A DNA stretch of 61,929 bases, filler included, from Platydemus manokwari (lineage: Eukaryota): NCBI GenBank assembly GCA_037951405.1. It is 5 parts of 5 records of this genome, joined end to end, with 100 filler letters (N's around TTAATTAATTAA, not from the genome) between each part and the next. Parts side by side here need not be neighbours in the genome. Positions count along the whole stretch, not along the records: positions 49,080 to 61,929 come from JBBMOY011942493.1; 4 more parts are not named here. One strand, given 5' to 3'. Positions 1 to 61,929 of the stretch are shown piece after piece. Positions within the stretch are counted from its first letter, which is position 1; each line of letters starts with the position of its first letter. Below the pieces are notes generated by a model. That model made no database searches and had not been told where the DNA came from. It saw nothing but the letters and a program-made list of their open reading frames with translations. Made by a program: the position numbers and the translations under genes.

Positions 1-2163
1 TAAAATAAACGTTTTAAATTTAGTTTTTTCCAAAATGTTTGCTTTCGTAACCATAAAAAAACAAACTAGCAATATTTGAGAGAGCGGGTGGGTGAACTGT
101 ACACCAGCTGAAAATTCCAGACCTGACAACATTTCTTTTGACACATAATTTACCATTGTTTTATTTGGAGTGGATTTGAGGCAGGCCTCAGTGTTTAATA
201 CAGAATGTTTAATAAACCACATGATCTGCGGCTGACTGATTCTTTAAAGGACAGGCTTTAGCTACCACAGTTATAAAAAAAATGTCATAGTACTTTTAGT
301 ATACGGTTTACGGGAATAAAGGTTGGGGTTATGCTGCAGTGTAGCATTTCACCTGTTAAGGTCCAAAATGAGCTAACAAGGAAAAGGAATATTTTTTTTT
401 TATATTGAAAAAATTGACATTTAAAAGTAATAATAAATCCATGAGTGATATTTTACTACATAATTGTATCAGTTAATCGGCATTATCAGAATTTTTTGAC
501 TATCAATACCTAAAATGGCAGCCCATGTAAATTCTTCTAGAGGAACAAAAGTATACCAGAAAGCTAAATTTTGACGTAAATCTACAAAGAGAAGAAACAA
601 ATTTGACGGAATAAAGCTTCGCTAAAACATTTTTGAAATTACGAAAGAGCCAGAACTGGGGAAAGCTGTAATTTATTTACCGTTACAGTAAGATAGTGCA
701 GATATGTTTGCACATTTTAGGAGTTGTAAACATGCAAAGTATTGTATATGTAGGGAATATAAAGAAAAGATGTATAGAAGATATAGCGAAGTTGTAAGGA
801 AGATTTAGAGAAAAAAAGTGAAGATATAAAGGTATCGAGAAGATACCTAGTAAAGAGGAAATAGAAAATTTTATATAGATAAATATCAGGAGAATTTGAT
901 ATAGAGATATTTGCGAATTTAAAGAGAATCGAAAATTTTAAAGAAAGGTGGTGTGAGGACTTATAGTAAATTGAAATAAAAAAATTATAATCAAATTTGT
1001 ATAAAATATTAATTTGTTTGAATCACTGTAATCAAAATATAATTTGGTTTCGTGGCTTATTAGTTAGTTCCAAATGTGTGTTTCATATAATAATAGTGAC
1101 TTACACATATGATATAATTACTATTAAATTTTTGAGTATGACAGTTATGAATTACAATAGAACTGATTAAAAATAAAACTTCTTGACTTTTTATCTCTAT
1201 ACAAATGTAGATGAGAAATAAGATAAACGAAATAAGATCTCGCAATTGAATCTTGTGCGCCATTATAATAAATACAATAACTTAAACAATTATTAGTCTA
1301 ATTCGTTGGTTAGATATTATTTCTTTGCGTGTTTCCATATTTCAAATTATGAATCATGTCTCGGTGAATAGGTCTGCGAATCAGAAAATTATCCTTGATT
1401 CAATCAATATTCTTGAATATTTACGATGAAACTCATGATGTTTAGAAGTAGAAATTAATTATAATTTCTTAAAATTATAATCACAGACCATTTGAAATTT
1501 GATATCTATTTCAATTTAATTTTATTTTCACCGACGTTATTACTGGTGAAAAATAAAAATGACAAATTAGAGAGATTTAACAATTTATAATCTTGCTTAT
1601 AATAATTGGTTTGAAGTGGAAATATCATCACAAACTTAAGCTTGGACGGATAATTTCAACAAAGTCAGACCAAATGTCAATATTGGAAAAGAAAAGTGAA
1701 ACAAACAACAAAACTTGTCAAATGATTTGTTAAGCGTTTTACAATTTGAGCGATTGCAGTTATTGACCTTTGTTATATTTGAATTTGTGAAAGTAAGGGT
1801 ATTTGATGCTATTGAAGATTATCGATCGATACATTCGCAAGAAACTTCTAGCAAGACTCAGTTGTGAAACAATTATATATAACTCTACTAACTTTAAAAA
1901 TTCAAATTCTTTAAATTATTGATTATTTATTTAGTGTGTGTATGTGTCATTTCAATTCCAATTATGCCACGATGTCACGCCATGTTTTATTGTCGTTTAT
2001 CTAAAAGCTTATTGTTAACCTTTATCTATGTTTAATAAAATTGTTCTATAATATGAATTAAATGCTTTATTCTAAACAATACATGATTAGTTCATACGAA
2101 GTTTTTCAAGGATAAATAAAACAAATTTTTTAAAAACAATTCTCAAATGGATTTTAAAATAAT

Positions 2164-2560
2164 ATGAAAATATCGGTAGTGGTGTGTGACTGGAATTCTT
2201 CAAAAAGCACAATCAAAAATATGGGAGTTAGGTTTATTGGGATTCACACATCGTTAGACAACACACACACTATCCTAAACCAAATTGCATATCTTCAATT
2301 AACAATCGTTGATTGCTTTACGGTTTTCGATAAGTCCATACCCACAGAAATCAGTGAGTATCGAAACGCACCAATGGCAAGGGAACTAGAAAGAAATTTA
2401 CCAGTAGGTTGGTCTTTAAACGATTCTAACAAATGACAAGTAAAATCTTAAATAATGTAAGGTCTAGTCTACAGCATAGTATATAAAAAAGTCAACTCTC
2501 AAGGACAACCCCCAGGGTTTTATAATCAGTAAATTATGTGATTATCTTTATTCTGGTGTT
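2164..2560 (+). mobile_element. Possible highly decayed reverse transcriptase fragment
   Basis: IVDCFTVFDKSIP (resembles D..AFD) followed by frameshifted GQPQGFIIS (resembles G.PQG..IS) and YVD-like remnants. Confidence 0.3.
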
Positions 2561-5012
2561 ACCGCTTTGTGAGGAATATTTAAAGGAACAAATTTAATCA
2601 TAATTTCAATAATTTAAAAATAATTTTAGAATGAAATTTGTAATATTTTAGAAATTTAAATTATAATATAAAAAAATGTTATGAAGTGATTTTTAAATAA
2701 TTTAAATATTTTTATTTAGAGATATATTAATATTTTAATTTCTTTAAAAATGCTTAATTTGTTTTAAATAATAAAAATTACGAAAATCGTCCAAATAAAT
2801 ACTTCTAACGAATCTCCAACTTCAAACGAGATAGCTACCTCTAACAATCTCCTTTAATTGTATGATTAATTTTCATTTGCAGTTCTTAGAGTAATTATAT
2901 TCAATGAAGTGAATATTTTGTAATTTGATGATCATCCTTATTTATTTTATTGATTTTATTACCATATGTATTGATTAATTTAATGAATCGATCAAATTGA
3001 TTTACCTTCGATAAAGTTATTAATCTAACGCAATATTCAATAAAATAAATTTATGATCTGATAAGACTTTAAAACATAAAATATAATTAATGATAAATGG
3101 AAAAAATATTAAAACCGTTAAAAAATAAAATAAAATAATCTAAATAAAGTTTGTTTAAAAAGCAAGGGTCTTTATTTAGACCTGAAAAGAACAGAAAAGA
3201 GACTTTATATAATATACATTGAGTAATTAAAATAACAAAAACAAAAAAAATTAACTTGTGTTTACAAAAATAAACAAGAAAAAGCGGAACATAAAAGAGA
3301 AACTAAATAGAAAAACTAAAATACAAAATGTAATATTGGATATAAAGTAATATTGGATATAAATCAAAAGCAGCAAACTGTTACGATCATTACTAAAACT
3401 GAATTCCTAAAATTATAATTTTAAAGTAACAACTCATCGAAATTCAATAATAGCACTGAGAAATCGTTAATGCGAATTACTAAGAAAACCAAATGTCAAA
3501 TCACAATGATTTTAGTATTCGAATGATAAACTTAATGACAGAAATTATCGATCATAGAAGATTGATGATTGTCTTCGAGATTTGACTCATTTTACAAACC
3601 TGTTGCTTAGCTTTGTTGTTTGATGCTTTGATTTTCTTTCTTTAAAACCGTTGGAAGACTAGGATGTTAATAAATTTCATTCTAACTATTATGTGATGTT
3701 CGTTGACATTCGTTGGTGTGTGGCAATTGACAATCGAAATGTAGTCGAAGATAGATAATTCGATGGCATATGATTGGCTACTGGCACGTATTATTTACTT
3801 GTTAGGTATATCACAGCAGTTGAGCTGTTCTAATAGCAGAACTCCGTAGTTATTACATTAAATTTTGCATATGATTTCTTCAACGTTGAAGTTATTTATA
3901 TAAACAACATATACTGTGATAAATGCCTTATTGTTATCTTAAATTTAAATTCTGTTTATATCCTACTTTTATTACATCGGAAACTTCAATTTAGTATGTG
4001 TACGACAAATCTGACTTTTTAGGGATTGTATTTAATACTACTTCCCAAAGTATTAATCAAATTAAAATTTAAATGTATCCAAAATAACTCGAAGAGAAAA
4101 ATAACAATAAAACTCCAATAATTCCTTCGATCTTAAGCCTGGCTTGTATTCTTGAACTTTTAACAAACACCCAATTTCTAAAACTAATCAATTAGATGGC
4201 AATTCAGCAAAGAAGGCATGAATTGATTCTAGATTTAGTATTTCTGTTTATTTCAGAAGTCATTATCAATCCTATTTAATCACAAAATATTAAATATCGA
4301 TCCATTCAAGTAAATTAAATTATCTCTAATGCTTTCACATAACTTCTTTATAATAAAAATGTATAATATAATTTTATAATTTCAAAACTACAGTTCAAAT
4401 TAGTCTGTCACTAACATCAATCGTAACTTTTTATAAAATCCCTTTTTTGTCAAATACGAAAGGATTACTAAAAATCAAGATTATTAAATATCAATACTTC
4501 ATGTAGTTGTTGAGAACAATAACTTTTCCACATCCTTAATAACATGAAAAATGATTCTAAAAAATTACAGAAAAATAGAAATAAGAATGTTTTATGAGGA
4601 AATATTCAATTATAATTGCTATCTAGAATCAAAAACACATCACATAAATAAATCCCATTCTCAAATGATGTAAGAAAGAAAATAATACATCTGTGATATT
4701 TAGAGGACAAAATAATTAACAGAAAGAATAAATTTAGAATAAAGAAAATCCATGTTACTCCAAAATTAATCTAAAACCAATTTAAACCTCACGAAAATTC
4801 AAGCAATAAAAACTTAATAAAAAAATTATCAAAGAAAAATTATTCGAAATTAAAAAAGCTAACAAACTATATTTTTATTTCATTTAAAAATCAAACAGCA
4901 ATGCAGCTAAAAATGAACATTAAATAAACGCGATTATCTGTGATGAATGCTTTATTAGAAATACATATTTATATATAGATAAATATAAATGCAATAGGAC
5001 ATTGTTCTTCAA

Positions 5013-49079: not shown

Positions 49080-49517
49080 ATAACTCCTTTATTTATCAAT
49101 GCAAGAACAATGAAAAATTCCCATTAAATAAATTATTCTATTAAATAAAAATTTTTCACCTTTTTTTCAATTTGAGTTGAGATGTATACATGAAAAGCCA
49201 ATTTAAAAAATACCGCTAACTACCTGATTGATAAATTGAACATTTTGAATCTTTCAAATTTTAATTAATTTTTATAATTGAATGTTATCTAGCAATAGAA
49301 TTGGCCTAGAAATGAACCATGAATTTATAAAATTCAAGTATTAAGAATTAGTTGAAAGCCTCATTTTACTTTTAATTATCGAGATATCTTTATAATCTTT
49401 TGTCTTATACTTATTTTTTACAAGTTCCTTAATAATCAAAATCGGTATTAAAATTGCAAAAATTCCAGATAACAAAATTAATTTATGAAATAATTAGAAA
49501 AAACAAATATCTCAGTT

Positions 49518-50607
49518 TCAATCGGTGAGATATTCTCCGCCACAATCCATCACTTCCTTCCACCGTTATGGCGGTTTGTCAATCTCACGTTTGAAATAGA
49601 TTGGTGATTTTTGGTCGGAAAATTCTTCAATCCACGTTGTTATTACTTTTTCGTTTTCAAATGTGATCCCAGAAAGATGGTTCGACATGAATCGGAATAG
49701 ATGAAAACCTGTTGGGGCTAAGCCTGGCGAGTATAGATGGTGTGGAAAAATTTCCCAGTCAGGCTCTTTAATAGCCAACTTTGTTATTATGACGACATGA
49801 GGCCAAGCATTGACACAATAAAATTCGGCATTGATTGTTTGGTTTTTTGGCAAGATTTTGTAATGAATAACACCAACTTGGTCTCACCAAACGCGCAACA
49901 GTGTTTCGCGTTGATGAACTTAGGTTTTCGGATGTGGTTGTGATTGCTTTTGAGGACTTACCCAAACTTTTTGTGTTTCAAATTTAAATACAGACACCAG
50001 TTCTCATCACTTGATACGATTCTGGAAAGGAAAGATTGATGTTGTTGCACAGTGAACGAGTAGTAATGCGGAAATTGAAACACTTTGATTTTTGCGACCC
50101 ATGCTGGAAGCTTTTGAACTTTTGCCATTTTCTTGAAATGTCTAGAAATAGTGGTGCAATCACAATCAATGGCTTATCCAAGCGCTTGTGGCGATTGACG
50201 CGGATCATCATGAATCAATTGGTTCAAACAGTCTTCATCAAAGTCACTAGGTCGGCCTGACCGAGTTGCATCGTTTAAGTCAAAATTTCCACTGTTAAAT
50301 TTCGAAAATCACTGTTGTGCTGTTTGTTCACTGACTGCCTTTTCTCTACAAACGCAGCAAATCATTCTGGTGCGTTCTGCAGCGTTTAAATGTTGATTAA
50401 AATAGAAAAGAAGTAGATGGCGGAAATGTTCATTTGTATCTCCCTGACACTCCATTTTAATGAGGGTAATAAAAGTGAAAGTTAGTCTAAAATGATTAAA
50501 ATCGATAACTCAGCTGAATGAATGTAACTGAAATCAGTAAAAACACGAAGTTGATGTGTTTTCTTTGCAACAAATAAAACTGTACGAATTTATGCACCAA
50601 CCCAATA
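49518..50607 (-). mobile_element. Defective mariner (Tc1/mariner, cecropia-like) DNA transposon
   Basis: TA plus TIR TTGGGTTGGTGCATAAATTCGTACAGTTTT at 50607-50576. ATG at 50455. HFRHLLLFYF, FNSGNFDLND..RSGRP, IVSSDENW, NQTINAEFYC, HHLYSPGLAPTGFHLF, RWKEVMDCGGEY. Contains stops and frameshifts. The second TIR was not found. Confidence 0.93.
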
Positions 50608-50941
50608 GTTAAATCAATATATGTCTAATTTTCACGACTATTACTAACAATATCATCATATATTATATAATTAATCTTGACTTTATTGTACCCTTTGCTT
50701 TGATTCAAGTAAAATAAAATTTATAGCGAAATATTTTTTTTTCAATTAACACAAAATAAACTTTTTTGACCATTATAATTAATTAAAGGAGTACGCAATT
50801 TATCATTCCTGATAACACCTGATAAAATCATAACTTCAGTGACAAATATAAAAGTTTTATAATATTATTTTTTTGTTTATACTACTAGGCATACCTGGAC
50901 TATTTGAACAATTAGTAAGGTGAAATTCTCAAAGTTGCCAT

Positions 50942-51653
50942 TGTTAGAATTATCAACTTATGCTAAATACCAAATTAATAATTTAAGATCACAATCGCTT
51001 ACAAAACCGAATCGTCAATAATCACAGTTCAAAATCACACTCAATAATCAATGAATAATCATCACAAGGCGGGATCATCATCTGAAAATTAAACATCGAC
51101 ATAGAAAGCTATTAAAACTGGTTGGTAGAAAATCAAGTAAAAGACTCACATAATGAAAATGATCAACTAAAAAGACTGCCAAATGCTCGTGAGATGCAAC
51201 TCCTTTTGAATGCTTATCATGTGTGTTCACTTGATGACTCAAGGACTTATTCTTACTTCACACGTCGGTCTGTTAGCAAATTTTCTTATATCTCTTGTTT
51301 TATATCTAGCGTATTTTGATGTTTGATGCCTGTTCTTGATATACACCATTTGATTATCGAGTTCTAGATGTGAATTGATATACAGGAAAAATTGATTGGC
51401 TATTTCCATAAGCGTTGTCGAATCTGTGCGAATCAACTTTGAGGGTTATTTTCATGATTTACGTGGATATTTTGCTTGTTTTTAAGATCTATCAAACATG
51501 ATTGTAAAGTAAATCTACAACACTCAAAATCTTAAATCAAACTTATTTAGAAAAGCAAAAGTTCCAAGAGTCAAATTTCAAAACACAATTGGCTCACCTC
51601 AAAAAGATAAAAAAAAAATAGCCACAAAAATTACTAATCACTGAAGTCTGACA
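50942..51653 (+). mobile_element. Solo LTR-like repeat, family B
   Basis: TGTTAGA...TCTGACA inverted TG..CA termini. Internal similarity to 58510-59100. Confidence 0.55.
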
Positions 51654-54018
51654 GTCTTGAAGCTTTGTTTTTCATTTGTTCGAATTGTCTGAAGACCAGC
51701 CAATTGACGAATTTCCTTCTATATTGCAAGATATTGGTATTCCTGAATGTTCATTATCTGTTGTTACTGTGCATCTATTTTCAATCGAAATACATCTCGT
51801 GTTTGATAATTCGAAGGCATATTATTGGAACGTGTGTTTATCTTTCCTGTGTGTAGTAACCTTTTGAAGGTTACTCCGATGGTTTCGATAATTATTCTTC
51901 ACCTTTTATCACATACTTCACATATCCCCCTTATCCCATAAGACTTTTTCACAAAATCTTAGGTTTCTTGTCGCTATCCATGTTACTTTCGATACCAATT
52001 GAAACGATTCAAAGAATGTAAAGTTTTTGGCTTGCACATATTATCACCAATATAATAAACAGCAATAAATTATAATAATAATAATAATCTAAATATTAAT
52101 AATAACACTAATAATGATAAAAATAATATCAGCGACATCGTGTGCAGAAACAATAATGATAACCATAATAATCACGGGGATAATAGAATTGCAATAGAAA
52201 GTATAAACAGCAATATGACTAATATCGCAATGATGTTTATAATAAAATAATAAACCTGATGATAATTAATAATTGTAGAGTTGAAAAAAAGGTTTGCCCT
52301 GCTAATATTAGTAATTAAATTATATTAATAATAAATTTATTAATTAAATAAAAATAATTTTTCATTTTTTTGGTTATCTGTTAAGAGAAAGAATGGTTTA
52401 TGGCTTTTGGCAACTGATTGTCGGATCAAAGCTCCACCACCCACCTGCATTTCCGCAATTCATATTTAATACTCGATTCTGGCAACTGCGAAGCTTATTA
52501 AAGTAGTGGGAGATGCCCATTTCTTTATCGAAATTAAATAATAAATATCTTTGTTGGATAACCCAATTGGTTGGCCATTCAGATTTGAGTTAAATGGTTT
52601 TATTTTTTTCTCGTTCCTCACTTATTTTTTATGCATGTTTTCCAGCTTTCCACTAGCTCAAAGTTATGTATCTGTCGTGGATTCTTAGCGCATTTAATTT
52701 AATTTTTTTAGGAGAATGACCATTGAAATCCTCATTGATTACCTGTGTCTTTTTTCATCTTCCGTGCATTTCAGTTGAAATAATATTGTAGTTAGTGCAA
52801 TATGAATTTGTACTTTGTTTTTCACTTCTATCAGCATCACAACTTTACTCACTTGATAGGACCAGGTCCATCGATTTGGATCATATTTCTCATTATCTTT
52901 TAATTTCATCTCATAATATGATATTAATGACAAATATTTTGTATATGACCGAAGATTTTTAAATGTTACATGTGTAATTTTGTAAATTGGCTGTGTTGTA
53001 TCATGCCCGTCTTTTTGGCCTAGTTTTATCTTGACTCTTATTTTTCGTGCCAAATGTGAAATGTTTGTAAGAAGTCACATCATTTGAACTCATAAAATGG
53101 GTCTTATCAAAATGCTATCTTTCAAATGAATAGACTATATTAAGATAAATTTCCGATTCGAGCTTTATTCGTGTAATCGTCCAATATGAATGCATGAGAA
53201 ATACTCTGATGTTTTTAACCAAATTCGATCTGAGCCAGATTTGTTATGTTTATAAATCCTAATGAATTTGGTGTGGAACAAACGCTTAAACATTCTACTA
53301 GTTCTATTTCTGTCCTTGGGTGTATCATAATAGTATAAACCTGTTTAATTCACAGCATCATTAAATTCAATACAAAATTAAAATAATTATTTAATGGTGC
53401 AGTCGAAAAAGAAATTAGGAATGAACAAGAAAATGATAAATAAAATAGCTCTTTCTTGCATAAAGTCTAATATAAATGCGAGCTATCTACTATGGAGGTT
53501 CCACGTGGGAAAGAGAACAAATACAGTCTTAAAAATAATTGAAGAGGATATCCAAGATAACATCGACTGGATAGCGGAGACAGAATCGATTGAAATGTTG
53601 AATCGATCGTACGATTGAACTAGCTAACTGTGATTCATGGATCGATCGAAAGAAATAACTATTTACATCCCATATTTTGATGTATGGGTATCTCGAATAT
53701 TAAGGTTTATGAATAAATATTAGTAGTAGTATTAGTATTGAAAATTTTGTTTATCTTTAATGAAATTAACTCCCAATCATTTATTAATGGTATTTATTGA
53801 TTAAATTTTTTCTGAAAAATACTGAAACTTATTTATTTTTATTCTTTTATTTTATCCCCTTTTTAAAAATAGGCATTTTGTTTTGGAATTTAAGTAGTAA
53901 TATGTTAAAATAAACGACACAATGTCTTACGTAAAAAATTTTAAAATAAAGTAAAATTTATTATTCTAAAAATAAGTCATTTTAATTGATAAAATATTTC
54001 TTTTTTATTGTCAATAAT

Positions 54019-54855
54019 TTATATGCCACCTTTCACTCTAGATTCTTCCTCTTTATAAATTCTTTTATAGTGATTATAAACGTATTCATCATCTATGTCT
54101 TTTTCACAAATCATATTATATGCTAACCCTTGATGTATTATATTCATGAAAAATGAATTGAAATGATATAAGATTCCCATTCCACAGAGGCCTTTATAAT
54201 GTTTACGGTATACATGTGAAAAAAATGGGATAATATTTTTATATGTTGGTGCCATTGCATCCATATAGTCTGATGGGAATTCTTCTTCTATTCCTGGCAT
54301 AAGGTTAGAATCAGTACGAATAATTAATAAATGCTCAATATATTTTTCAATATACTCTGGATACGTATCGATTGCATTACAACCTTCCGGATCATGAGAA
54401 GTATGATACCATTCTTTGTCAAATATGCAATGATTTTTTCTATCATGAATTTGATCTTTCAATTCCTTTGGTAAAGGATTAGCTGGTGGCACTCCGTAGT
54501 ACTTCACAGATCTTGCTTTATTAAGGCGACATTCTGAGCTGCTATCCAGGCAGAAATACATTAATATATTCCAATAATTTATTAAGCGGTCATACAAATG
54601 AAACATGGTATATGCAATCCATTCATTGTGAGAAGAGTCATTTGGTGCTATTGCAAAATAACGTGTTCTTATTCCTATTCTTAATGTGTCTGGCATTGGA
54701 CCCTCTTCATCTTCGAGTTCTGCTATATCTTTATGTTGGATATGTTCTGCCTGCATGAATTGTAAACGTGATCGTTTTATAGGTGAATCATAATCTTGCC
54801 CTTCTGGGAGACTTAAATTAGACCCAGGAATTTGACGATTTTTTCTGCAGGCCAT
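54019..54855 (-). CDS. Divergent intronless MOB1/phocein-family (Mob kinase activator-like) protein, 278 aa
   Basis: APNDSSHNEWIAYTMFHLYDRLINYWNILMYFC aligns with MOB1 [39 protein letters not shown] resembles APKYID. FPSDYM...SHVYRKH resembles FPKNFM...AHIYHQH. HFNSFF resembles HLNTSF. Intact ATG-TAA ORF with AATAAA just after the stop. Confidence 0.82.
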   Translation of the reverse strand: MACRKNRQIPGSNLSLPEGQDYDSPIKRSRLQFMQAEHIQHKDIAELEDEEGPMPDTLRIGIRTRYFAIAPNDSSHNEWIAYTMFHLYDRLINYWNILMYFCLDSSSECRLNKARSVKYYGVPPANPLPKELKDQIHDRKNHCIFDKEWYHTSHDPEGCNAIDTYPEYIEKYIEHLLIIRTDSNLMPGIEEEFPSDYMDAMAPTYKNIIPFFSHVYRKHYKGLCGMGILYHFNSFFMNIIHQGLAYNMICEKDIDDEYVYNHYKRIYKEEESRVKGGI

Positions 54856-55126
54856 ACTTATACAATGTTGCTTAACTCAATCGATTATTTAAAATTTAAA
54901 ATAATTTAAAGATCAAAAATATTTTCTCGCGGATTAATGGTTAATTCAAACCACAGAATTGTATTTTAACTTCAGGTTATTAATTATTTAAAACCAATTA
55001 TTTTAATTGAATTTATTTTAATAGGTTTTTATATTACTATAAATGAATTCTATGATTTACCAAATCTAGATAAATTTAATTGATTAAAATTTTAGTTTAA
55101 GGTATTAAAAACGTCCTTTAATTCCA

Positions 55127-55940
55127 TCACAAAAATTTATTAAAATTTTGAAAAATTACATTGTTCAAAATATTCAAACAAACTGAAATGCTTTGTGACA
55201 TATTTGGCCAGAAGTAAATATTTTGAATGTAATCGTCCAATTTCTTATTACCGATATGGCATAATTCCTCATGAAGGCATCTCGTTAATTTTTGCGAATG
55301 AACCTCTGGCACAACAATTCACTTCTTTCCATTCTCGTTGTACACCACTATATTCGTACACACCAAACAATTCGTATTTCTCTAAACTGTTAAAATATTT
55401 AATTTTCTTGACCGATGAATTGACTCCTATTTCCGTTTTCTGTAACCATTTATAAATAGAACCAACGACACTATCTTTTTGTCAAATCTTCCTCATTTCG
55501 TCATTATTCGCAATGGAATGCTCGACAATATTAACAAAACCAATTTTTGGTTTACCTTCTTTAGCCCCTTGGTGCTGAGTTAAACACTATGAAAGCAATG
55601 CTTCACCTAACCTTGAAAGTCCAACCACATTTCCATGACCTCATTCCTTCCGATCTTGAAGTTCGAAATTTAATCCGGATAAGTTTGTAAACCATGTTTG
55701 TTAGTTTTCTTCATGTATGTCAAGGCCTTGTGATCAATGCTAATCACAAATTTCTTTCCCAACAGATAATGCTTAAAATGCATTGTAAACTCGTGAATTG
55801 CCAAAAGCTTCTTCCTCCTGATGCAATAACCTTTTTCATTACTATTAAGAGTTCTAGAAGCATAGGCTACTCTCTCTCTTTTTCAGTGCCATCCAACTGG
55901 GTTAGAACGGCACCAATCGCTCCGAAACTAGCGTCGTCAA
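55127..55940 (-). mobile_element. Degenerate Gypsy pol fragment (RNase H and integrase zinc-binding start)
   Basis: DASFGAIGAVLTQ, DHKAL, HGNVVGLSR, LHEELCHIG...YFWPNM. The HQGAKEGKPK segment is homologous to HHGAKKEKPK in the 24.3 kb element. Confidence 0.88.
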
Positions 55941-55944
55941 TATT

Positions 55945-58420
55945 CAAAACGAGCTCCGCGCAAATTTCAGAAAAATTCAAACCAGATACCAAGACAACTC
56001 AAATCTAAAGGTTATCAATCTCACTGAGATTAAGCACACCTTAAAAAAACTGGAAAACTCGGTACCTGAAAACGATTGGATCACTTACAAAGACTAGAGA
56101 TTAATCGATCCCCAGCAAATCTTCCTCCAATCAATGTTCAACAGAATTCTCAAGAACAAAACAATACCGGATCAGTCGAAAGAATGCAACACAAATCTTC
56201 TCCTGCAACCTGGGAAATAATCAACATCCCACAAGATCACATCCTGGCGTCCCATTGCTCTCAATGACTCGTCTTACCGAATCTTCACTACAATACTAAA
56301 CCTAAGGTCACTGAAATGGATAGATGCTGGAAACTTACTGTCATCAAACCAAACAGCAACGCTCGCATCAGAGAGATGCGCAGAGCACAATGCATATCTA
56401 TTCTCACTGCAAGAATACTGCACAACAACAAACTATATCTCTGCTGGGCTGACCTCAAAGAAGCCTTCCAAAGCTTACCACACGAGGTCATCTGGTTTAC
56501 GCTTAAAAAAATGAGTTTCAGTATTCTTTACATTGAGATGATCAAGGCCATATACCAGGACTCCAAATCAACTTATACTTGTGGAATGCTCAAGACACCA
56601 CCAATTCCAATCTACCGGGAAGTAAAACAAGGATGCCTTCTGTCAATGACACTCTTCTGCCTGTCAATTGATTTCCTCATGTACCTCTCACAATATATGA
56701 CACTCAATTCTCAACACTGGCCAACACTGACGATGTCATTATCATAGCAAATTCTGGAGAGAACTTGGATAACCGGCTAAATCAACTTATTAATCACACA
56801 ACGGATATTATAAACACAATAAACATCTCCAAATGTGGCTACTTCTGCAAAAAATAATAAGAATCGAATCGATCTAACAGTATTCGGAGAATCCGTGCCA
56901 ATCTTGGATAGTGACAATATCTACAAATATCTCGGAGTGCTCTTCAGTCTACCCAAGCGATTACCGGTCGACCACATCCTGGAATCAATCATCACAGACT
57001 TTGAAGCTATCGCAGACTGTATGTTAAACAAAAATTCCAAGCTTACAATATTTTTTTGCACTCGAAATTGCCTTTCCACCTTCGAATCCAACAAGTAGAA
57101 ACTACCAAACTGGATTCAAGAAGACGGATCTCATATCAAAATTAATCAGTACAATCATTTGACAATAAAAATGCGTCAAATATCTCGTAAAATTCTAAAA
57201 ATGGACTGTTGAAACTCAACCAACAACAACTTCTTCTATATACCTACCACACTTGGCCGGATTGGACTCACCAGGTCCCTCGTGGAATATTGCATATAGA
57301 ACATTGTCGATGTCTTCCGCTATCTCACAATCCCGGACCAAGAATTTAGAACATTTACGTCAAACCACATAACCAATATTGTGAAGCACCGAATGACTGA
57401 ATCAAATGATCTCGTAACAGCACTTCTCCGGATCTCTGACAAACTACCAACTGAAAAAGCATCCTCTGCAGTAATATGGTGGACCAATACTAACTATGCA
57501 GTCAGAAAACTTAGGAAGAGCCAAATCGATGTAGAATTCTACAACCCCCACACTGAAAGTTTCCTAAAACTCCCGTTGGACAACAACAAGACTTACCATT
57601 TCAACTTCGACAATCGTGGTAAACTCTCAGACATTCTATATCAGTATCAATGCATTACTACAACGAGTGGGTACTATGAAAAAAAAGGAAGACTGGTTCA
57701 CCGCTTCTCGACCAGTCATCTCTCGCAAAAACCTGTGAAAAACTTCCACTTGTCGCCAGAGGTCCGGATTTTAACCTATCAGGCCAGTAAAAACCTACTA
57801 TTACTGAATTACACACCGTATTTCATGAAGAAAGGGAAATTAACCTTATGCCGACGACGCGAGACAGAACAGGAAACTGATGCCCACATATTCATCCATT
57901 GTCCATCAGTCCCTGGTCTGACATCAAAAAGACACTCAATCGTTTTGGACCACCTAGACAACTACTTACAATCACTCGGACTGGATACCGATATTGATAC
58001 AAGCCCACCGGAACTAAATACAAGATTGCAACCGGATCTGATCATCGGGAACAAAACCAAGAGACATGCCTACATCATAGGCCTGAAGATCCCATATGAT
58101 ATCTCTGATAACTTTAAGAAACACTGGTTCTTGAACTTTGAAAAATATTGGACAATAGCGGCTAAAATCAAAACAAAAACCAAATATGAAACGTCACTGG
58201 ATGTACTCTGTATTGGAGTACTTGGATCTTGGGATCCGAAAAACAACAAAGTGCTTTCCAACATCGGTCTAGACAAGCCACATATCACCCCCTTCCTCTG
58301 TACTGTTGCACTCAATTTTGTTATTTTAGCAATCAAATGACAAGATCATGAAATTTTTAGCTATATTCTTGCATATCCCTACCTTTTACTGATCATCGTG
58401 TGTCAAACCTGCGTCTATAG
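55945..58420 (+). mobile_element. 5'-truncated degenerate non-LTR retrotransposon with restriction-like endonuclease (R2 group; NeSL/R5/Utopia-like)
   Basis: RT motifs WRPIAL, WADLKEAFQSLPH, VKQGCLLSMTLF, NTDD (for YADD), YKYLGV. Zinc knuckle CRR..ET.AHI..HC, then RH, RLQPDL, KIPYD, EKY and IGVLGSWDPKN (RLE domain). Confidence 0.9.
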
Positions 58421-58509
58421 AGTTTAAAATCGAGATATTTGCAACGCGGTGCAGAACAAACAACAGCTCCTGTGGTATGATCGCTTATCCACATTTGATA
58501 GAGCTACTG

Positions 58510-59100
58510 GGTTATCAATCAACACTTTAGATCTGAAAATTGTATTAACCAAAATATTACGATCAAATTTTCAATAACAACAGAAGAATCTTTTCGCAAC
58601 TCACAAAGTAAATCACTTAAGACGGAATCAGCGCTCTAAAGTGAAAAACAGAATAGAAAGTAATCAAAAAGACTACTTACTAAAAATCACACAAAGATAA
58701 GCTTACCACTCAAGTTACCAACCAAAAAGACTGGCAGATATTCATGGAACTCAACATCTTTTATAAATCTATCGGGTGTACCTGATTAATGTCATAGATT
58801 TTCGTTTTTCATTTGCTGAATTTGTTCGTGTATTGATCTACCCAGCATCTCTCATGCTATTGGCAGATATTTAAGCTTGTTGCCATTTGTATGTATATGC
58901 CCGTTGACTCTTATCTTCTAAATATGAATTAATATTAGAATGAATCTGATTGGTTAACGGCACGTGTGTTTATTAGGTCTGTGTGTATTGACCCTTTTTA
59001 GGATTCTTTCTTTGATTTCTATGACCCTTTTGATTGATTTGTAATCTACCAAACAGAAATTTCCTGAGTTTGGCCTTGTCTGCAGACTGTACTACGAACA
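58510..59100 (+). mobile_element. Solo LTR-like repeat, family B
   Basis: A-rich then T-rich halves as in 50942-51653, a shared aaaagactg.ca.at block, and an end at ...GAACA. Confidence 0.45.
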
Positions 59101-59209
59101 TTTGTCGTCTCAATTTTAATTTTATAAAATACAGACATTTTCAAATAGGTAAAAGATATTTTTTTTAATTCATTAGGAATCTGTAATATGGAAAAATGAA
59201 AATATTAAA

Positions 59210-59460
59210 TAAAATAGCTATCGATCTAGCAAAAAATAAAGATACAGTCACTCACATAAAATCATATCGAACCATTGACGATAAGCTTATTAGGAAAAAA
59301 TTGCTGGCCTATGGTAAAATATCAACTGACGCTGAAAACTGAAAATTGTAGTTATAAATCATAACAGATTTCAAAGCCCGAATTATCAATAAATACAGTC
59401 GAAACAACTCTAAATTTACAAGAAATAATCACCTATGGTGGTATCAGCAATCGAAAGTCA
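59210..59460 (+). mobile_element. Short LINE reverse transcriptase relic
   Basis: IAIDLAKNKDTVTH...KLLAYG resembles DLSKAFDTV.H..LL.KL..YG. Confidence 0.45.
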
Positions 59461-60290
59461 AACGGTAAAATAGAAGGCAAACTGGTCATCTAAAATATTA
59501 CGTTTAGTCTCACAAAATAAAATTACCGACTCAAGAGACTTGTAATTGCTCGTGATAGGCTATCACGTGTGTACACTTGATTTTTCAGAGCTTCAATTTT
59601 CATTCGTCAGGATATTTTACATCTCGGTCTGTTAGGAAATTTTATTGTATCTCTCATGCCATTGACGAATTTCTATGTTTGTTTCCAGTAATTGGTATGT
59701 GCGAGTTGATTATTGAATTCTAAATATAGATTGAAATATAGGAATAATATGATTGACTATATGCAAGTACGGTTATTGAATCAGTGTTTATCAACTTATT
59801 TAAGGGTTTCTTCAATGGTTTCCATAAATATTTTTGTGTTTTTTAAGATTCATTTAACAACTATTTGAATAATTTCGGATTTAGAATTGTAATTGATAGT
59901 ATTAATATTTTTTTGTAACATCTGTAAATTTTGCTACAGATTTTTAACAAAATTATTAAAACTGTATTAAGGATCATCATGAGTATTTTATTGCAAATAT
60001 AAAAATTTCAGTAAGCAAATGGTGTCGCGCCTTTTATATTAACATATAAATTTGCTTATTTACCGAATTAGCACTAATTACATATTTTACATTTTCTAAT
60101 TTATTTGTATAATAAAAATTTAGAAATTTAAAATTATTTATAGTTTAATTAGAACATTTTAGTTGCTTAAAACATCTATTAACAATAATTGTAACTTCAT
60201 TGTTTTAATAATATTAACAAATATAAGCTTGTGTACAATTATTATCCGTAATTCTTATTTTAATTATGTGTTTAGGTGTTTTGATGTGTT

Positions 60291-60833
60291 ATGAATAGAG
60301 GCCGTGCTGAACCTGGAAGCGTAGAAAGGTACAAATATTTAGAAGAAATTGTTACAGAATTAAACAGTTCTGAATCACTTGAAATCAAAGATCAGATAAT
60401 TGCTAATTTAGCTAATTTTGCATACGATTGCAGAAATCATCACCATTTATTCCAATTAGGCATATTAGACATATTCTTTACAAATATAAAGTTATTTTAT
60501 AATCAGAAATTAGGTACAGATAGATACTTAAACAGAATCCATTTAAATTCTGTAATAGGAATCTGCAATCTTTCTGCTAATACAGATTATCATAAAGCTA
60601 TTTGTAATCACGATAAATTCTGGTTGATAATCAAAGGTCTTTCTTCTGATAATTTAGAAATTGTTGTAACCGTTGTTACAACATTTATTTACCTCTGTGA
60701 TAGTGAAGTTGGGAAGAAAAGTGTTATAATTTCAGGAATTATAAGCACTTGTCAAAAATTGTCAATAACCACTAATTGCAGATTGAAAAACGTAGTAACG
60801 ATATTTTTGGAAGACTATGTTTCGAAGCCCTAA
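60291..60833 (+). CDS. ARMC7: Armadillo repeat-containing protein 7, intronless CDS, 180 aa
   Basis: RYKYLEEIVTEL...KDQIIANLANFAYD.RN...L.QL.ILDIF, GICNL and C-terminal RLKNVVTIFLEDY match ARMC7 family motifs (YLQ.LVTEF, EQVLANLANFAYDP, RL.NLA.IFL.D). Confidence 0.92.
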   Translation: MNRGRAEPGSVERYKYLEEIVTELNSSESLEIKDQIIANLANFAYDCRNHHHLFQLGILDIFFTNIKLFYNQKLGTDRYLNRIHLNSVIGICNLSANTDYHKAICNHDKFWLIIKGLSSDNLEIVVTVVTTFIYLCDSEVGKKSVIISGIISTCQKLSITTNCRLKNVVTIFLEDYVSKP

Positions 60834-61399
60834 ATTTTTCAAAATAGCAACCCTAAATATTGTTAGAAACTTATCAGTTCCTAAAGTCTCTCCGATTCCT
60901 TCAAATTATCTGAAATCTGGATACATTAATTTCATTCGATTCGAAGCAGGTGATGAATTATGTATCGTTCGACCACAAAATTTGAAATCCGTACCTATTA
61001 AACCAGAATTATTGGAATATATACACAAGGATAATTGTTCTTATCAATCTATTAATAAATCTTCGATAACCGAAACTAGTAGTCAAACCATGGAAGATTA
61101 CACTTTTGAGAATTCTCGTAAGGTTTTTATGAAATACTATGAGGAAATTCTGAAATTAATTTTCAGATGCTAATAATTTATCAGTGTTGGATTCAATGTC
61201 TCACATATTAAAACCTTTAACAGTCAAACAACGATTTGAGGTGTATGGCAAGTTAGGGAAACTGCGATTAACAACTTTAGTAGTGATTAGTTCATTATCT
61301 GGCTTCGTTATGGCACCTTTACCAATAGAATGGAGTACAATTTTTCTTGCTAGTATTGGGACATTCTGCACCAGTATGGCAGCGAATACTATCAATCAG
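60817..61399 (+). CDS. COX10: Protoheme IX farnesyltransferase (heme O synthase), first two exons; gene continues beyond the window
   Basis: Exon 60817-61117 begins with a basic, acid-free presequence-like segment (MFRSPKFFKIATLNIVRNLSVPK). A 49-nt GTAAGG..TTTCAG intron (61118-61166) joins in frame to exon 61167-61399, YGKLGKLRLTTLVVISSLSGFVMAP...GTFCTSMAANTINQ then gt, the COX10/UbiA N-terminal motif. Confidence 0.88.
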
Positions 61400-61929
61400 G
61401 TACGGGATTATCATCATTAAATAAACCTTGTATTTAATGGCTTTGTATTTTGACATTTTATTTTATTTATTTTTGGTGATTTCAGCTTATCAATCATGGG
61501 ATTGTCTGAATTATAATTTGACCCAAAATAATAATAAATTATTATTCTCGAAATTTTAATTATATATTTATATTTTTGAATAATAATAATAATAATTGTA
61601 GAATATATCTTACATGATTTATGATGAATTTAATTCTCATTTTAATTCTCATCAATAATAAAAATAATAATAATAATAATCAATTTTGAATTGTAATTTG
61701 GAACATCTTGGACATCGAATACGTATTTCTTTTGCATTTGAATTGCATTTTGAATGAATTAAAATACTCATCACTGAATTCTGATTAATATATAATAATT
61801 ATTATTATTTGTGATTATATATCAAACCGATTTAATATTTTGTCAATATTAATGATTTCAGGATTCACATTTTGTTATTTATATATTATTATTGTTATTG
61901 TTTATCTGTATAAATTGATGGCTTTATCA

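What the first reader, a model, noticed from the sequence alone, without database searches (positions are those of the whole stretch)
60268..61399. ARMC7 and COX10 overlap on the same strand: candidate bicistronic transcript
Seen: the COX10 ATG (60817) lies 17 nt inside the end of intronless ARMC7 (GAC TAT GTT TCG AAG CCC TAA, stop at 60833), in the +1 frame. An in-frame TAA at 60796 closes the COX10 frame upstream, and the segment after the ATG looks like a mitochondrial presequence. There is no intergenic space for an ARMC7 3' end or a COX10 promoter. A tttag acceptor-like site sits about 15 nt upstream of the ARMC7 ATG. Known: ARMC7 is a component of the activated U12-type spliceosome, COX10 makes heme O, and flatworms use spliced-leader trans-splicing. 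Inference: the two unrelated conserved proteins come from one transcription unit, decoded by termination-reinitiation, SL trans-splicing or alternative splicing from a shared leader. Alternatively, COX10 has a promoter inside the ARMC7 CDS. I know of no description of this pairing.
Basis: partly seen in the sequence, partly recalled or inferred. Interest (0 to 1): 0.8.

Follow-up and report, generated by a model that had tools for sequence, protein, structure and literature searches.

The report
ARMC7–COX10 overlapping bicistronic gene pair
An intronless ARMC7 gene overlaps the start of the mitochondrial heme O synthase gene COX10 by 17 bases, and not one ATG lies between the two start codons, which is the known mark of a two-protein mRNA read by ribosomes scanning through the first gene.

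Summary
ORF 60291-60833 is a full-length ARMC7 homologue. It overlaps by 17 nt an ORF that starts at ATG 60817. That ORF joins in frame, through a canonical 49-nt intron, to an exon of COX10 (protoheme IX farnesyltransferase).

The new result is an ATG-free zone. The + strand has no ATG in any frame between the ARMC7 ATG and the COX10 ATG. This 526-nt gap is the longest on either strand of the 12.85-kb piece. About 10.5 ATGs are expected, and 0 of 5000 dinucleotide shuffles had none. With the protein held fixed, only 0.12% of synonymous shuffles had none. ARMC7 here has no internal Met, whereas orthologues average 3.2.

This signature is known from Drosophila stoned and Snapin and from green-algal bicistrons. 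It indicates that ribosomes reach the COX10 AUG by scanning across the ARMC7 coding region of a shared mRNA. They could do so by leaky scanning, or by reinitiating after a 10-codon uORF that overlaps the ARMC7 AUG.

SL trans-splicing, termination-reinitiation and a promoter late in ARMC7 leave the ATG-free zone unexplained.

No RNA data exist for this organism, and no close relatives are in the databases. I file it as a new member of a known kind.

The parts
60266..60298 (+). Short upstream ORF of 10 codons. ATG 60266 has A at -3, and a second in-frame ATG lies at 60284. It ends at TAG 60296-98 and overlaps the ARMC7 start codon. It could carry ribosomes past the ARMC7 AUG, if the mRNA starts upstream of it.
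   Evidence: Sequence read. These are the only ATGs in 60020-60290.
60271..60275 (+). Its use is untested.
   Evidence: TTTAG occurs 18 times on the + strand of the piece (1.4 per kb), so it is weak evidence by itself.
60291..60833 (+). ARMC7 coding sequence: 180 aa, intronless, full length, with no internal Met.
   Evidence: An in-frame TGA at 60282-84 rules out an N-terminal extension.
60294..60816 (+). ATG-free zone. There is no ATG in any frame between the two start codons.
   Evidence: Zero ATGs observed against about 10.5 expected, and 0 of 5000 dinucleotide shuffles had none. It is the longest ATG-free gap on either strand of the piece (526 nt; the next is 339). ATG is the most depleted of the 64 trinucleotides.
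60796..60798 (+). TAA in the COX10 frame, 21 nt upstream of ATG 60817. It closes that frame upstream.
60817..60833 (+). 17-nt overlap of the ARMC7 3' end (frame 0) and the COX10 5' end (frame +1).
60817..61117 (+). COX10 exon 1 coding part: the start codon, a presequence-like N-terminus and a poorly conserved linker (100 codons plus 1 nt).
   Evidence: The frame is open for 107 codons in DNA that is about 70% A+T.
61118..61166 (+). COX10 intron 1, 49 nt, GTAAGG...TTTTCAG, phase 1.
   Evidence: It is the only GT-AG pair found here that joins the frame of ATG 60817 to the COX10 frame of exon 2.
61167..61399 (+). COX10 exon 2. It covers the first transmembrane region up to ...AANTINQ, just before the family's EVPFDSQMxRTKNR motif.
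61400..61929 (+). Start of COX10 intron 2 (GTACGG...). The rest of the gene lies beyond the end of the piece.
   Evidence: no COX10-like frame appears in this stretch.
61054..61059 (+). AATAAA inside COX10 exon 1. It is a possible poly(A) signal for an ARMC7-only transcript isoform. This is speculative.
   Evidence: AATAAA occurs 2.3 times per kb on this strand, so it may be there by chance.

Best explanation
ARMC7 and COX10 form one transcription unit whose mature mRNA carries both coding regions.

Some ribosomes that load at the 5' end start at the ARMC7 AUG (60291). It has G at -3 and A at +4, which is only a moderate context. The others pass it and scan about 520 nt through the ARMC7 coding region. 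They pass either by leaky scanning, or because they translated the 10-codon uORF 60266-60298 that ends 5 nt past the ARMC7 AUG and then resumed scanning. The ARMC7 region has been cleared of every ATG in all three frames, so the next start they meet is the COX10 AUG at 60817 (A at -3). That start yields a heme O synthase with a mitochondrial presequence.

Shown here: the gene identities, the overlap, the splice-frame link, and the ATG-free zone with its statistics.

Inferred: the shared mRNA, scanning as the decoding route, and how ribosomes bypass the ARMC7 AUG.

A close variant is not excluded. Some transcripts may start just downstream of the ARMC7 AUG, so that the ARMC7 body serves purely as the COX10 5' leader.

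ARMC7 is intronless here but has introns in the butterfly, and apparently in the crinoid, whose 197-aa gene spans 1387 nt. It may therefore have arrived as a retrocopy in the COX10 leader. This too is inference.
For: 1. No ATG lies between 60291 and 60817 on the + strand. This 526-nt gap is the longest on either strand of the 12.85-kb piece, the next being 339 nt, and it is bounded exactly by the two start codons.
2. Dinucleotide-preserving shuffles of 60294-60816 average 10.5 ATGs with a minimum of 2, and 0 of 5000 have none. ATG is the most depleted of the 64 trinucleotides (0 against 10.5 expected).
3. With the protein held fixed, synonymous-codon shuffles give a mean of 4.0 out-of-frame ATGs, and only 0.12% give none. 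The depletion is therefore at the nucleotide level, not just a lack of Met.
4. ARMC7 here has no internal Met. Among 120 orthologues the mean is 3.2, and only 3 have none.
5. Controls: other coding stretches of the same piece hold 10-30 ATG per kb. The butterfly ARMC7 CDS has almost the same base composition and also lacks internal Met, yet it has 10 out-of-frame ATGs.
6. ATG density is normal again after 60817, with ATGs at 60953, 60960, 61090 and onward.
7. ARMC7 homology reaches its last residues, so its stop really lies after the COX10 AUG. No room is left for a separate 3' end and promoter.
8. The frame of ATG 60817 is open for 107 codons and joins the COX10 exon through a canonical 49-nt intron. 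Its first 42 residues have 7 K/R and 0 D/E. The 126-residue N-terminal extension lies within the range seen in animal COX10 proteins.
9. The same signature, an upstream cistron poor in AUGs, was tied to leaky scanning by mutation in green algae. That paper reports the same for Drosophila stoned and Snapin (PMC11892635).
Against: No RNA evidence of any kind was available. The only public run that holds the locus is genomic DNA, so a transcript spanning both ORFs has not been seen.

No close relative of either protein is in the databases. Conservation of the arrangement and of the ATG-free zone could not be tested.

The ARMC7 AUG has a purine (G) at -3, so it is not in a clearly weak context. 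How a useful share of ribosomes passes it is unresolved.

On a bicistronic mRNA the ARMC7 stop would lie upstream of all COX10 exon junctions and of a very long 3' region. In many animals that invites nonsense-mediated decay.

If the animal uses SL trans-splicing, processing at an acceptor near 60813 could coexist with scanning.
Confidence: 0.6

Rival explanations
1. Operon-like polycistronic pre-mRNA resolved by spliced-leader trans-splicing. An SL is added at the acceptor-like site TTTTTGGAAG|ACT ATG (60813|60814), which makes a monocistronic COX10 mRNA. Because the ARMC7 stop lies downstream of that site, each pre-mRNA would give either ARMC7 or COX10, never both.
For: An AG preceded by a T-run sits 3 nt before the COX10 ATG, in frame with it. 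Flatworm operons resolved by SL are documented (PMC12582326; PMC8629364). Operons with no intercistronic spacer are known in Ciona and in C. elegans SL1-type operons (PMC12582326).
Against: Nothing in this model requires removing every ATG from the 523 nt upstream, so the strongest feature of the locus goes unexplained. AAG is, from general knowledge, a poor acceptor compared with the TTTTCAG used 350 nt downstream. In the one flatworm with UTR data, all 45 operon pairs had at least 5 nt between cistrons. The organism could not be shown to be a flatworm or to use SL trans-splicing. No RNA is available to look for SL reads.
Confidence: 0.14
2. COX10 has its own promoter or transcription start inside the ARMC7 coding region, and ARMC7 mRNAs end inside COX10 exon 1. 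The two would then be overlapping but separate transcription units.
For: An AATAAA at 61054 could end an ARMC7 mRNA. Overlapping same-strand genes with internal promoters are known in compact loci (general knowledge).
Against: A start site late in ARMC7 would need an ATG-free leader only from that site onward. Here the ATG-free zone reaches back exactly to the ARMC7 ATG. AATAAA occurs 2.3 times per kb on this strand by chance. A start just after the ARMC7 ATG would fit the data, but I count that as a variant of the shared-unit model.
Confidence: 0.12
3. The true COX10 N-terminus comes from a distant upstream exon spliced to the acceptor at 60813|60814 (phase 0). Intronless ARMC7 would then be nested in COX10's first intron.
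For: The acceptor-like AG at 60812-13 is in frame with the downstream ORF. Nested intronless genes are common in animals (general knowledge).
Against: The presequence-like segment starts directly at ATG 60817 (7 K/R and 0 D/E in 42 residues), so an extra N-terminal exon is unnecessary. The resulting N-terminal length already fits animal COX10 proteins. The region upstream of ARMC7 is retroelement debris. The ATG-free zone would be unexplained, because intron sequence is never scanned.
Confidence: 0.05
4. Termination-reinitiation. Ribosomes finish ARMC7 at 60833, move back 17 nt and restart at AUG 60817, as in calicivirus and influenza B TURBS systems.
For: Start and stop lie close together and overlap. 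One TGGGA, the core of TURBS motif 1, occurs at 60710.
Against: After a 180-codon ORF, reinitiation in eukaryotes needs a dedicated tethering element (general knowledge; PMC3035654 abstract). A single TGGGA 107 nt upstream is at chance level (my estimate: about 0.3 expected in 543 nt). Ribosomes that translate ARMC7 never scan it, so the ATG-free zone would again be unexplained.
Confidence: 0.04
5. There is no functional link. The overlap and the ATG-free stretch are chance, and COX10 starts at a later ATG (61090 or 61196).
For: There is no transcript evidence and no comparative data. N-terminal regions of COX10 are poorly conserved.
Against: Chance is rejected by the shuffles (0 of 5000, and 0.12% with the protein fixed). 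A start at 61090 gives an acidic N-terminus (MEDYTFENS...) with 5 D/E in 40 residues. The frame upstream of 61090 is open for 97 further codons in A+T-rich DNA and begins with a presequence-like segment.
Confidence: 0.05

Closest known systems
Drosophila dicistronic mRNAs stoned (stnA/stnB) and Snapin, read by leaky scanning (Wall et al. 2005, as described in PMC11892635; 159 dicistronic pairs in FlyBase, PMC4528330)
   Same: These are animal nuclear genes in which two unrelated proteins come from one mRNA. The upstream cistron is deficient in internal AUGs, and the downstream cistron depends on ribosomes scanning through it.
   Different: Here the two coding regions overlap by 17 nt rather than being separated. 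The pair (ARMC7 and COX10) is different. Neither the transcript nor the mechanism has been shown experimentally.
Green-algal bicistronic loci such as TOM22 and OST4 in Auxenochlorella and Chlamydomonas (PMC11892635)
   Same: Potential start codons are under-represented before ORF 2. In the TOM22 case there is no internal AUG at all in ORF 1 or the inter-ORF region. ORF 2 output was shown to fall when an AUG is reintroduced.
   Different: The algal ORF 1s have clearly weak Kozak-like contexts and short inter-ORF spacers. Here the ARMC7 AUG has G at -3, an overlapping uORF is present, and the ORFs overlap. The lineage is an animal.
SL-resolved operons of flatworms, nematodes and tunicates (PMC12582326, PMC8629364)
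   Same: Two same-strand genes have essentially no intergenic space and are presumably co-transcribed.
   Different: In those operons the pre-mRNA is cut into monocistronic mRNAs, the cistrons do not overlap, and no ATG depletion of the upstream gene is expected. The locus here carries the mark of translation from an uncut bicistronic mRNA.
MOCS2A/MOCS2B overlapping bicistronic gene (mentioned in PMC4528330 for Drosophila Mocs2/CG42503; the overlap in human is from my own knowledge)
   Same: Two conserved proteins are encoded in overlapping frames of one locus, and the downstream ORF is reached by scanning.
   Different: The MOCS2 products are subunits of one enzyme. ARMC7 and COX10 have no known functional relation.

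Membership tests
ARMC7 (armadillo repeat-containing protein 7) | Full-length sequence homology to named ARMC7 proteins of about 175-210 aa | tested here: met
   33-36% identity over 93-98% of the query, 1503 relatives at E<=1e-5, and hits named ARMC7 from many animal phyla.
ARMC7 (armadillo repeat-containing protein 7) | Conserved family motifs kept along the whole length, including the C-terminal IFLED | tested here: met
   27 invariant columns are kept, including A38-D46 (ANLANFAYD) and F172, E174 and D175.
ARMC7 (armadillo repeat-containing protein 7) | Function with RBM48 in the minor (U12-type) spliceosome | not testable with these tools
   This role is from general knowledge of the human protein. 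Nothing in the piece bears on it.
COX10 / protoheme IX farnesyltransferase (UbiA superfamily) | Sequence homology of the first transmembrane region to named COX10 proteins | tested here: met
   39-55% identity to animal 'protoheme IX farnesyltransferase, mitochondrial', with a collinear alignment. The Pfam UbiA match is only weak (E=0.0013) because just 77 residues are available.
COX10 / protoheme IX farnesyltransferase (UbiA superfamily) | Asp-rich catalytic motifs of the UbiA fold | not testable with these tools
   The piece ends in intron 2. Exon 2 stops at ...AANTINQ, immediately before the EVPFDSQMxRTKNR motif.
COX10 / protoheme IX farnesyltransferase (UbiA superfamily) | N-terminal mitochondrial targeting presequence | tested here: inconclusive
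   the composition (7 K/R and 0 D/E in 42 residues) and an amphipathic stretch fit a presequence. No dedicated predictor was available.
Bicistronic mRNA decoded by leaky scanning | Depletion of AUGs in all frames between the two start codons | tested here: met
   0 observed against 10.5 expected, 0 of 5000 shuffles with none, and ATG the most depleted trinucleotide.
Bicistronic mRNA decoded by leaky scanning | Weak initiation context at the upstream AUG and a better one at the downstream AUG | tested here: inconclusive
   ARMC7 has G at -3 and A at +4, and COX10 has A at -3 and T at +4. The difference is small, and the consensus for this organism is unknown.
Bicistronic mRNA decoded by leaky scanning | A mature transcript that spans both ORFs | not testable with these tools
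   the only run that holds the locus is genomic DNA.
SL trans-spliced operon | SL-bearing reads at an acceptor upstream of the downstream gene, and SL RNA genes in the genome | not testable with these tools
   There is no RNA run. The piece is only 12.85 kb, and the taxon is unverified.
SL trans-spliced operon | The upstream gene's 3' end lies before the downstream trans-splice site, so the cistrons do not overlap | tested here: not met
   the ARMC7 stop (60833) lies 17 nt after the COX10 AUG.

The most novel reading that the evidence does not exclude
In an animal lineage said to resolve its polycistrons by SL trans-splicing, a conserved spliceosome protein gene (ARMC7, probably a retrocopy) has been taken up as a translated 180-codon 'upstream ORF' of the heme O synthase mRNA. 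It was then remodelled into a Met-free, ATG-free sequence. One uncut mRNA would thus set the ratio of a nuclear RNA-processing factor to a mitochondrial respiratory-chain assembly enzyme, with a start-overlapping mini-uORF acting as the switch.
Probability: 0.3. Interest if true: 0.65.

Novelty: new member of a known kind. Interest (0 to 1): 0.5.

Why it matters
If RNA data confirm it, this is a very clean animal example of a bicistronic nuclear mRNA. A conserved 180-residue protein has lost every methionine and every out-of-frame ATG, so that ribosomes can reach an essential mitochondrial enzyme gene that overlaps its end. It shows that an 'ATG-free zone between two start codons' can be found from raw genome sequence alone. 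That gives a simple screen for such loci in unannotated genomes. It also warns annotators that this pair will be fused, truncated or mis-started by standard gene callers. The ARMC7-COX10 pairing was found in no paper and is absent from the two other animals checked.

Tried and rejected
- **RNA evidence.** The look-up of sequencing runs gave one run only. Laid on the locus, it is genomic DNA: its contigs cover intron and intergenic sequence at an even depth of about 10-13.
- **Exact-protein look-up of ARMC7.** It is not on record. The run's contigs break inside the ORF, which may be why.
- **Synteny.** ARMC7 neighbours are kinase, RPL37 and F-box genes in a crinoid, and eIF2A-like and MaoC dehydratase genes in a butterfly. 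Neither has COX10 nearby. The short Logan contigs with ARMC7 homologues were fetched, but their downstream sequence was not examined.
- **Butterfly ARMC7-MaoC pair.** The two genes lie 70 nt apart on the same strand. I checked them as a possible parallel bicistron and rejected it, because the ARMC7 CDS there has 10 out-of-frame ATGs, close to expectation. It serves as a control instead.
- **Taxon.** The profile search for ARMC7, the names of the COX10 hits and a search with the MOB-like ORF (blank) gave no flatworm relative and no close relative at all. The flatworm assignment stays unverified.
- **Termination-reinitiation.** One TGGGA at 60710 is at chance level.
- **Frameshift fusion of ARMC7 to COX10.** I rejected this on reasoning. 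The usable window is only 35 nt after the TAA at 60796, and the presequence would end up internal.
- **Acceptor at 61166 with donor at 61123.** This pairing is out of frame. The GTAAGG donor at 61118 is the one that fits.
- **Correction.** My first reading of the ARMC7 AUG context as weak (T at -3) was wrong. The base at -3 is G.
Full report
**What is there.** The piece (49080-61929) is about 70% A+T. On the + strand, ORF 60291-60833 encodes 180 residues without an intron. It is 33-36% identical, over 93-98% of its length, to proteins named armadillo repeat-containing protein 7. A profile built from it and five hits finds 1503 relatives, with named ARMC7 from many animal phyla among the best 120. 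The alignment keeps 27 invariant columns and runs to the very end. The invariant F172, E174 and D175 of the IFLED motif sit directly before the second ATG, and one orthologue ends at the same alignment column. An in-frame TGA at 60282-84 rules out a longer N-terminus (reading). ARMC7 is therefore complete, and its stop at 60831-33 is real.

**The COX10 side.** ATG 60817 lies in the +1 frame, 17 nt before the ARMC7 stop, and a TAA at 60796-98 closes that frame upstream. From 60817 the frame is open to 61173. The donor TC|GTAAGG at 61117|61118 and the acceptor TTTTCAG|AT at 61166|61167 remove 49 nt. This joins the frame, in phase 1, to the frame of the next exon, which ends at CAG|GTACGG after 61399. 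The alternative donor at 61123 is out of frame.

A search of 1.84 billion representatives with exon 2 returns 107 hits. The best ones carry the name protoheme IX farnesyltransferase, mitochondrial, or COX10, from a beetle, a lamprey, an eel, a goby and an annelid, at 39-55% identity. An alignment with twelve longer COX10 proteins is collinear (Y.KLsK.RLT.LVV...G...AP.P...GT...S.AAN.INQ). It shows that the exon stops just before the family's EVPFDSQMxRTKNR motif. The catalytic part of the gene lies beyond the end of the piece.

The N-terminal extension before this block is 126 residues here. In other animals it is roughly 40-200 residues. The first 42 residues have seven K/R, no D/E and an amphipathic stretch. 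A start at 61090 would instead give an acidic N-terminus.

**The new observation.** I counted start codons to see what a scanning ribosome would meet. Between the ARMC7 ATG and the COX10 ATG there is no ATG in any frame.
- This 526-nt gap is the longest ATG-free gap on either strand of the 12.85-kb piece, the next being 339 nt. Its two ends are exactly the two start codons.
- Dinucleotide-preserving shuffles of 60294-60816 hold 10.5 ATGs on average and never fewer than 2 in 5000 trials.
- A first-order Markov expectation is also 10.5, and ATG is the most depleted of the 64 trinucleotides.
- The strand-symmetric control CAT occurs 8 times.
- With the amino-acid sequence held fixed and synonymous codons shuffled, 4.0 out-of-frame ATGs are expected, and only 0.12% of shuffles have none.
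- The protein has no internal Met. Among 120 orthologues the mean is 3.2, and 3 have none.
- Other coding stretches of the same piece hold 10-30 ATG per kb.
- The butterfly ARMC7 CDS has almost the same base composition and also lacks internal Met, yet it has 10 out-of-frame ATGs.
- After 60817 the ATG density is normal again.
- Upstream, 60020-60290 holds only two ATGs, at 60266 and 60284. They share a frame and open a 10-codon uORF that ends at TAG 60296-98, across the ARMC7 ATG.

**What it means.** An upstream cistron cleared of AUGs is the recognised mark of a bicistronic mRNA whose second ORF is reached by scanning ribosomes. In green algae, potential start codons are under-represented before ORF 2, and reintroducing one AUG sharply lowers ORF 2 output. 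The same paper reports that the Drosophila stoned and Snapin loci have upstream ORFs deficient in internal AUGs and depend on leaky scanning (PMC11892635). Dicistronic mRNAs are not rare in animals: FlyBase lists 159 pairs (PMC4528330).

I therefore read the locus as one transcription unit whose mature mRNA carries both ORFs. Some ribosomes start at 60291. The rest pass it and start at 60817.

How they pass it is open. The ARMC7 AUG has G at -3 and A at +4, and the COX10 AUG has A at -3 and T at +4, so context alone is not decisive. The overlapping uORF, whose first AUG has A at -3, could carry ribosomes past the ARMC7 AUG and release them to reinitiate at the next AUG, which is COX10's. Transcripts that start just after 60291 would have the same effect.

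The steps shown are the gene identities, the overlap, the splice link and the ATG-free zone. The shared mRNA and the scanning route are inferred.

**Rivals.**
- *SL trans-splicing at TTTTTGGAAG|ACT ATG (60813|60814).* This is possible if the animal has SL trans-splicing. It would make ARMC7 and COX10 mRNAs mutually exclusive products of each pre-mRNA. It gives no reason for an ATG-free ARMC7, and AAG is (from general knowledge) a poor acceptor. In the flatworm with UTR data, all 45 operon pairs keep at least 5 nt between cistrons (PMC12582326).
- *A promoter late in ARMC7.* It would explain an ATG-free leader only from that point onward.
- *An upstream COX10 exon spliced in at 60814.* This makes the presequence-like start at 60817 redundant and again leaves the ATG-free zone unexplained.
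- *Termination-reinitiation.* It needs a tethering element. One TGGGA, 107 nt upstream of the restart AUG, is at chance level, and ribosomes translating ARMC7 do not scan it.
- *Chance.* It is rejected by the shuffles.

**Limits.**
- No RNA exists for this organism in the run index. The single run that holds the locus is genomic DNA.
- Neither protein has a close relative in the databases. A search with the MOB-like ORF for a taxonomic anchor was blank.
- In a crinoid and a butterfly, ARMC7 is not next to COX10, so the pairing is lineage-specific.
- No paper holds both gene names.
- ARMC7 is intronless here. It has two introns in the butterfly, and the crinoid gene spans 1387 nt for 197 residues. 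An origin as a retrocopy inserted in the COX10 leader is plausible but untested.

**Verdict.** In kind it is a new member of the known class of animal dicistronic mRNAs read by scanning. It is unusual for the overlap of the two ORFs, for the completeness of the ATG depletion over a conserved 180-codon gene, and for the gene pair. I give the scanning model a confidence of 0.6 and rate interest at 0.5.

Noticed in passing
window 54019-54855 (-): A 278-aa ORF whose C-terminal part (residues 166-254) matches Pfam Mob1_phocein at E=3.5e-12, and whose nearest Atlas clusters are MOB kinase activators. The word-based homologue search found nothing at E<=1e-5. It is either a very divergent MOB-family gene or an ORF that runs through an intron at its N-terminal half.
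   Followed up: partly
window about 55200-58340 (+), and 58500-59074: Broken non-LTR retroelement. ORF 56316-56747 matches RVT_1 weakly (E=1.7e-6) and a 319-aa ORF at 57381-58340 has no Pfam hit. G+C is raised (0.38-0.42) with a strong negative GC skew. The stretch 58500-59074 has a summed contig depth of 1,700-4,200 in the DNA run, against about 10-13 for the ARMC7-COX10 locus. It is a high-copy repeat that ends about 1.2 kb upstream of ARMC7.
   Followed up: partly
L006 10001-13984 (Parnassius mnemosyne, GCA_963668995.1): The butterfly ARMC7 (3 exons, no internal Met) is followed 70 nt downstream on the same strand by a 155-aa MaoC-dehydratase ORF. The ARMC7 CDS holds 10 out-of-frame ATGs and the spacer holds one more. 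This is not a leaky-scanning pair, although the tight spacing may still mean co-transcription.
   Followed up: partly
window 60291-60833 compared with L005 and L006: ARMC7 is intronless here. It has two introns in the butterfly, and the crinoid gene spans 1387 nt for 197 aa. This suggests the copy in the window could be a retrogene.
   Followed up: no
window 59650-59764 and 61524-61929: A small local rise in depth (154 against about 12) at 59650-59764. From 61524 onward there are low-complexity AAT/ATT-rich stretches where the run's contigs break or were skipped as repeats. These are short dispersed or simple repeats flanking the locus.
   Followed up: no
window 49566-49853 (-): A 95-aa ORF that looked to me like the C-terminal end of a mariner-type transposase. 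It has no Pfam match at E<=0.01, so this is unverified.
   Followed up: partly
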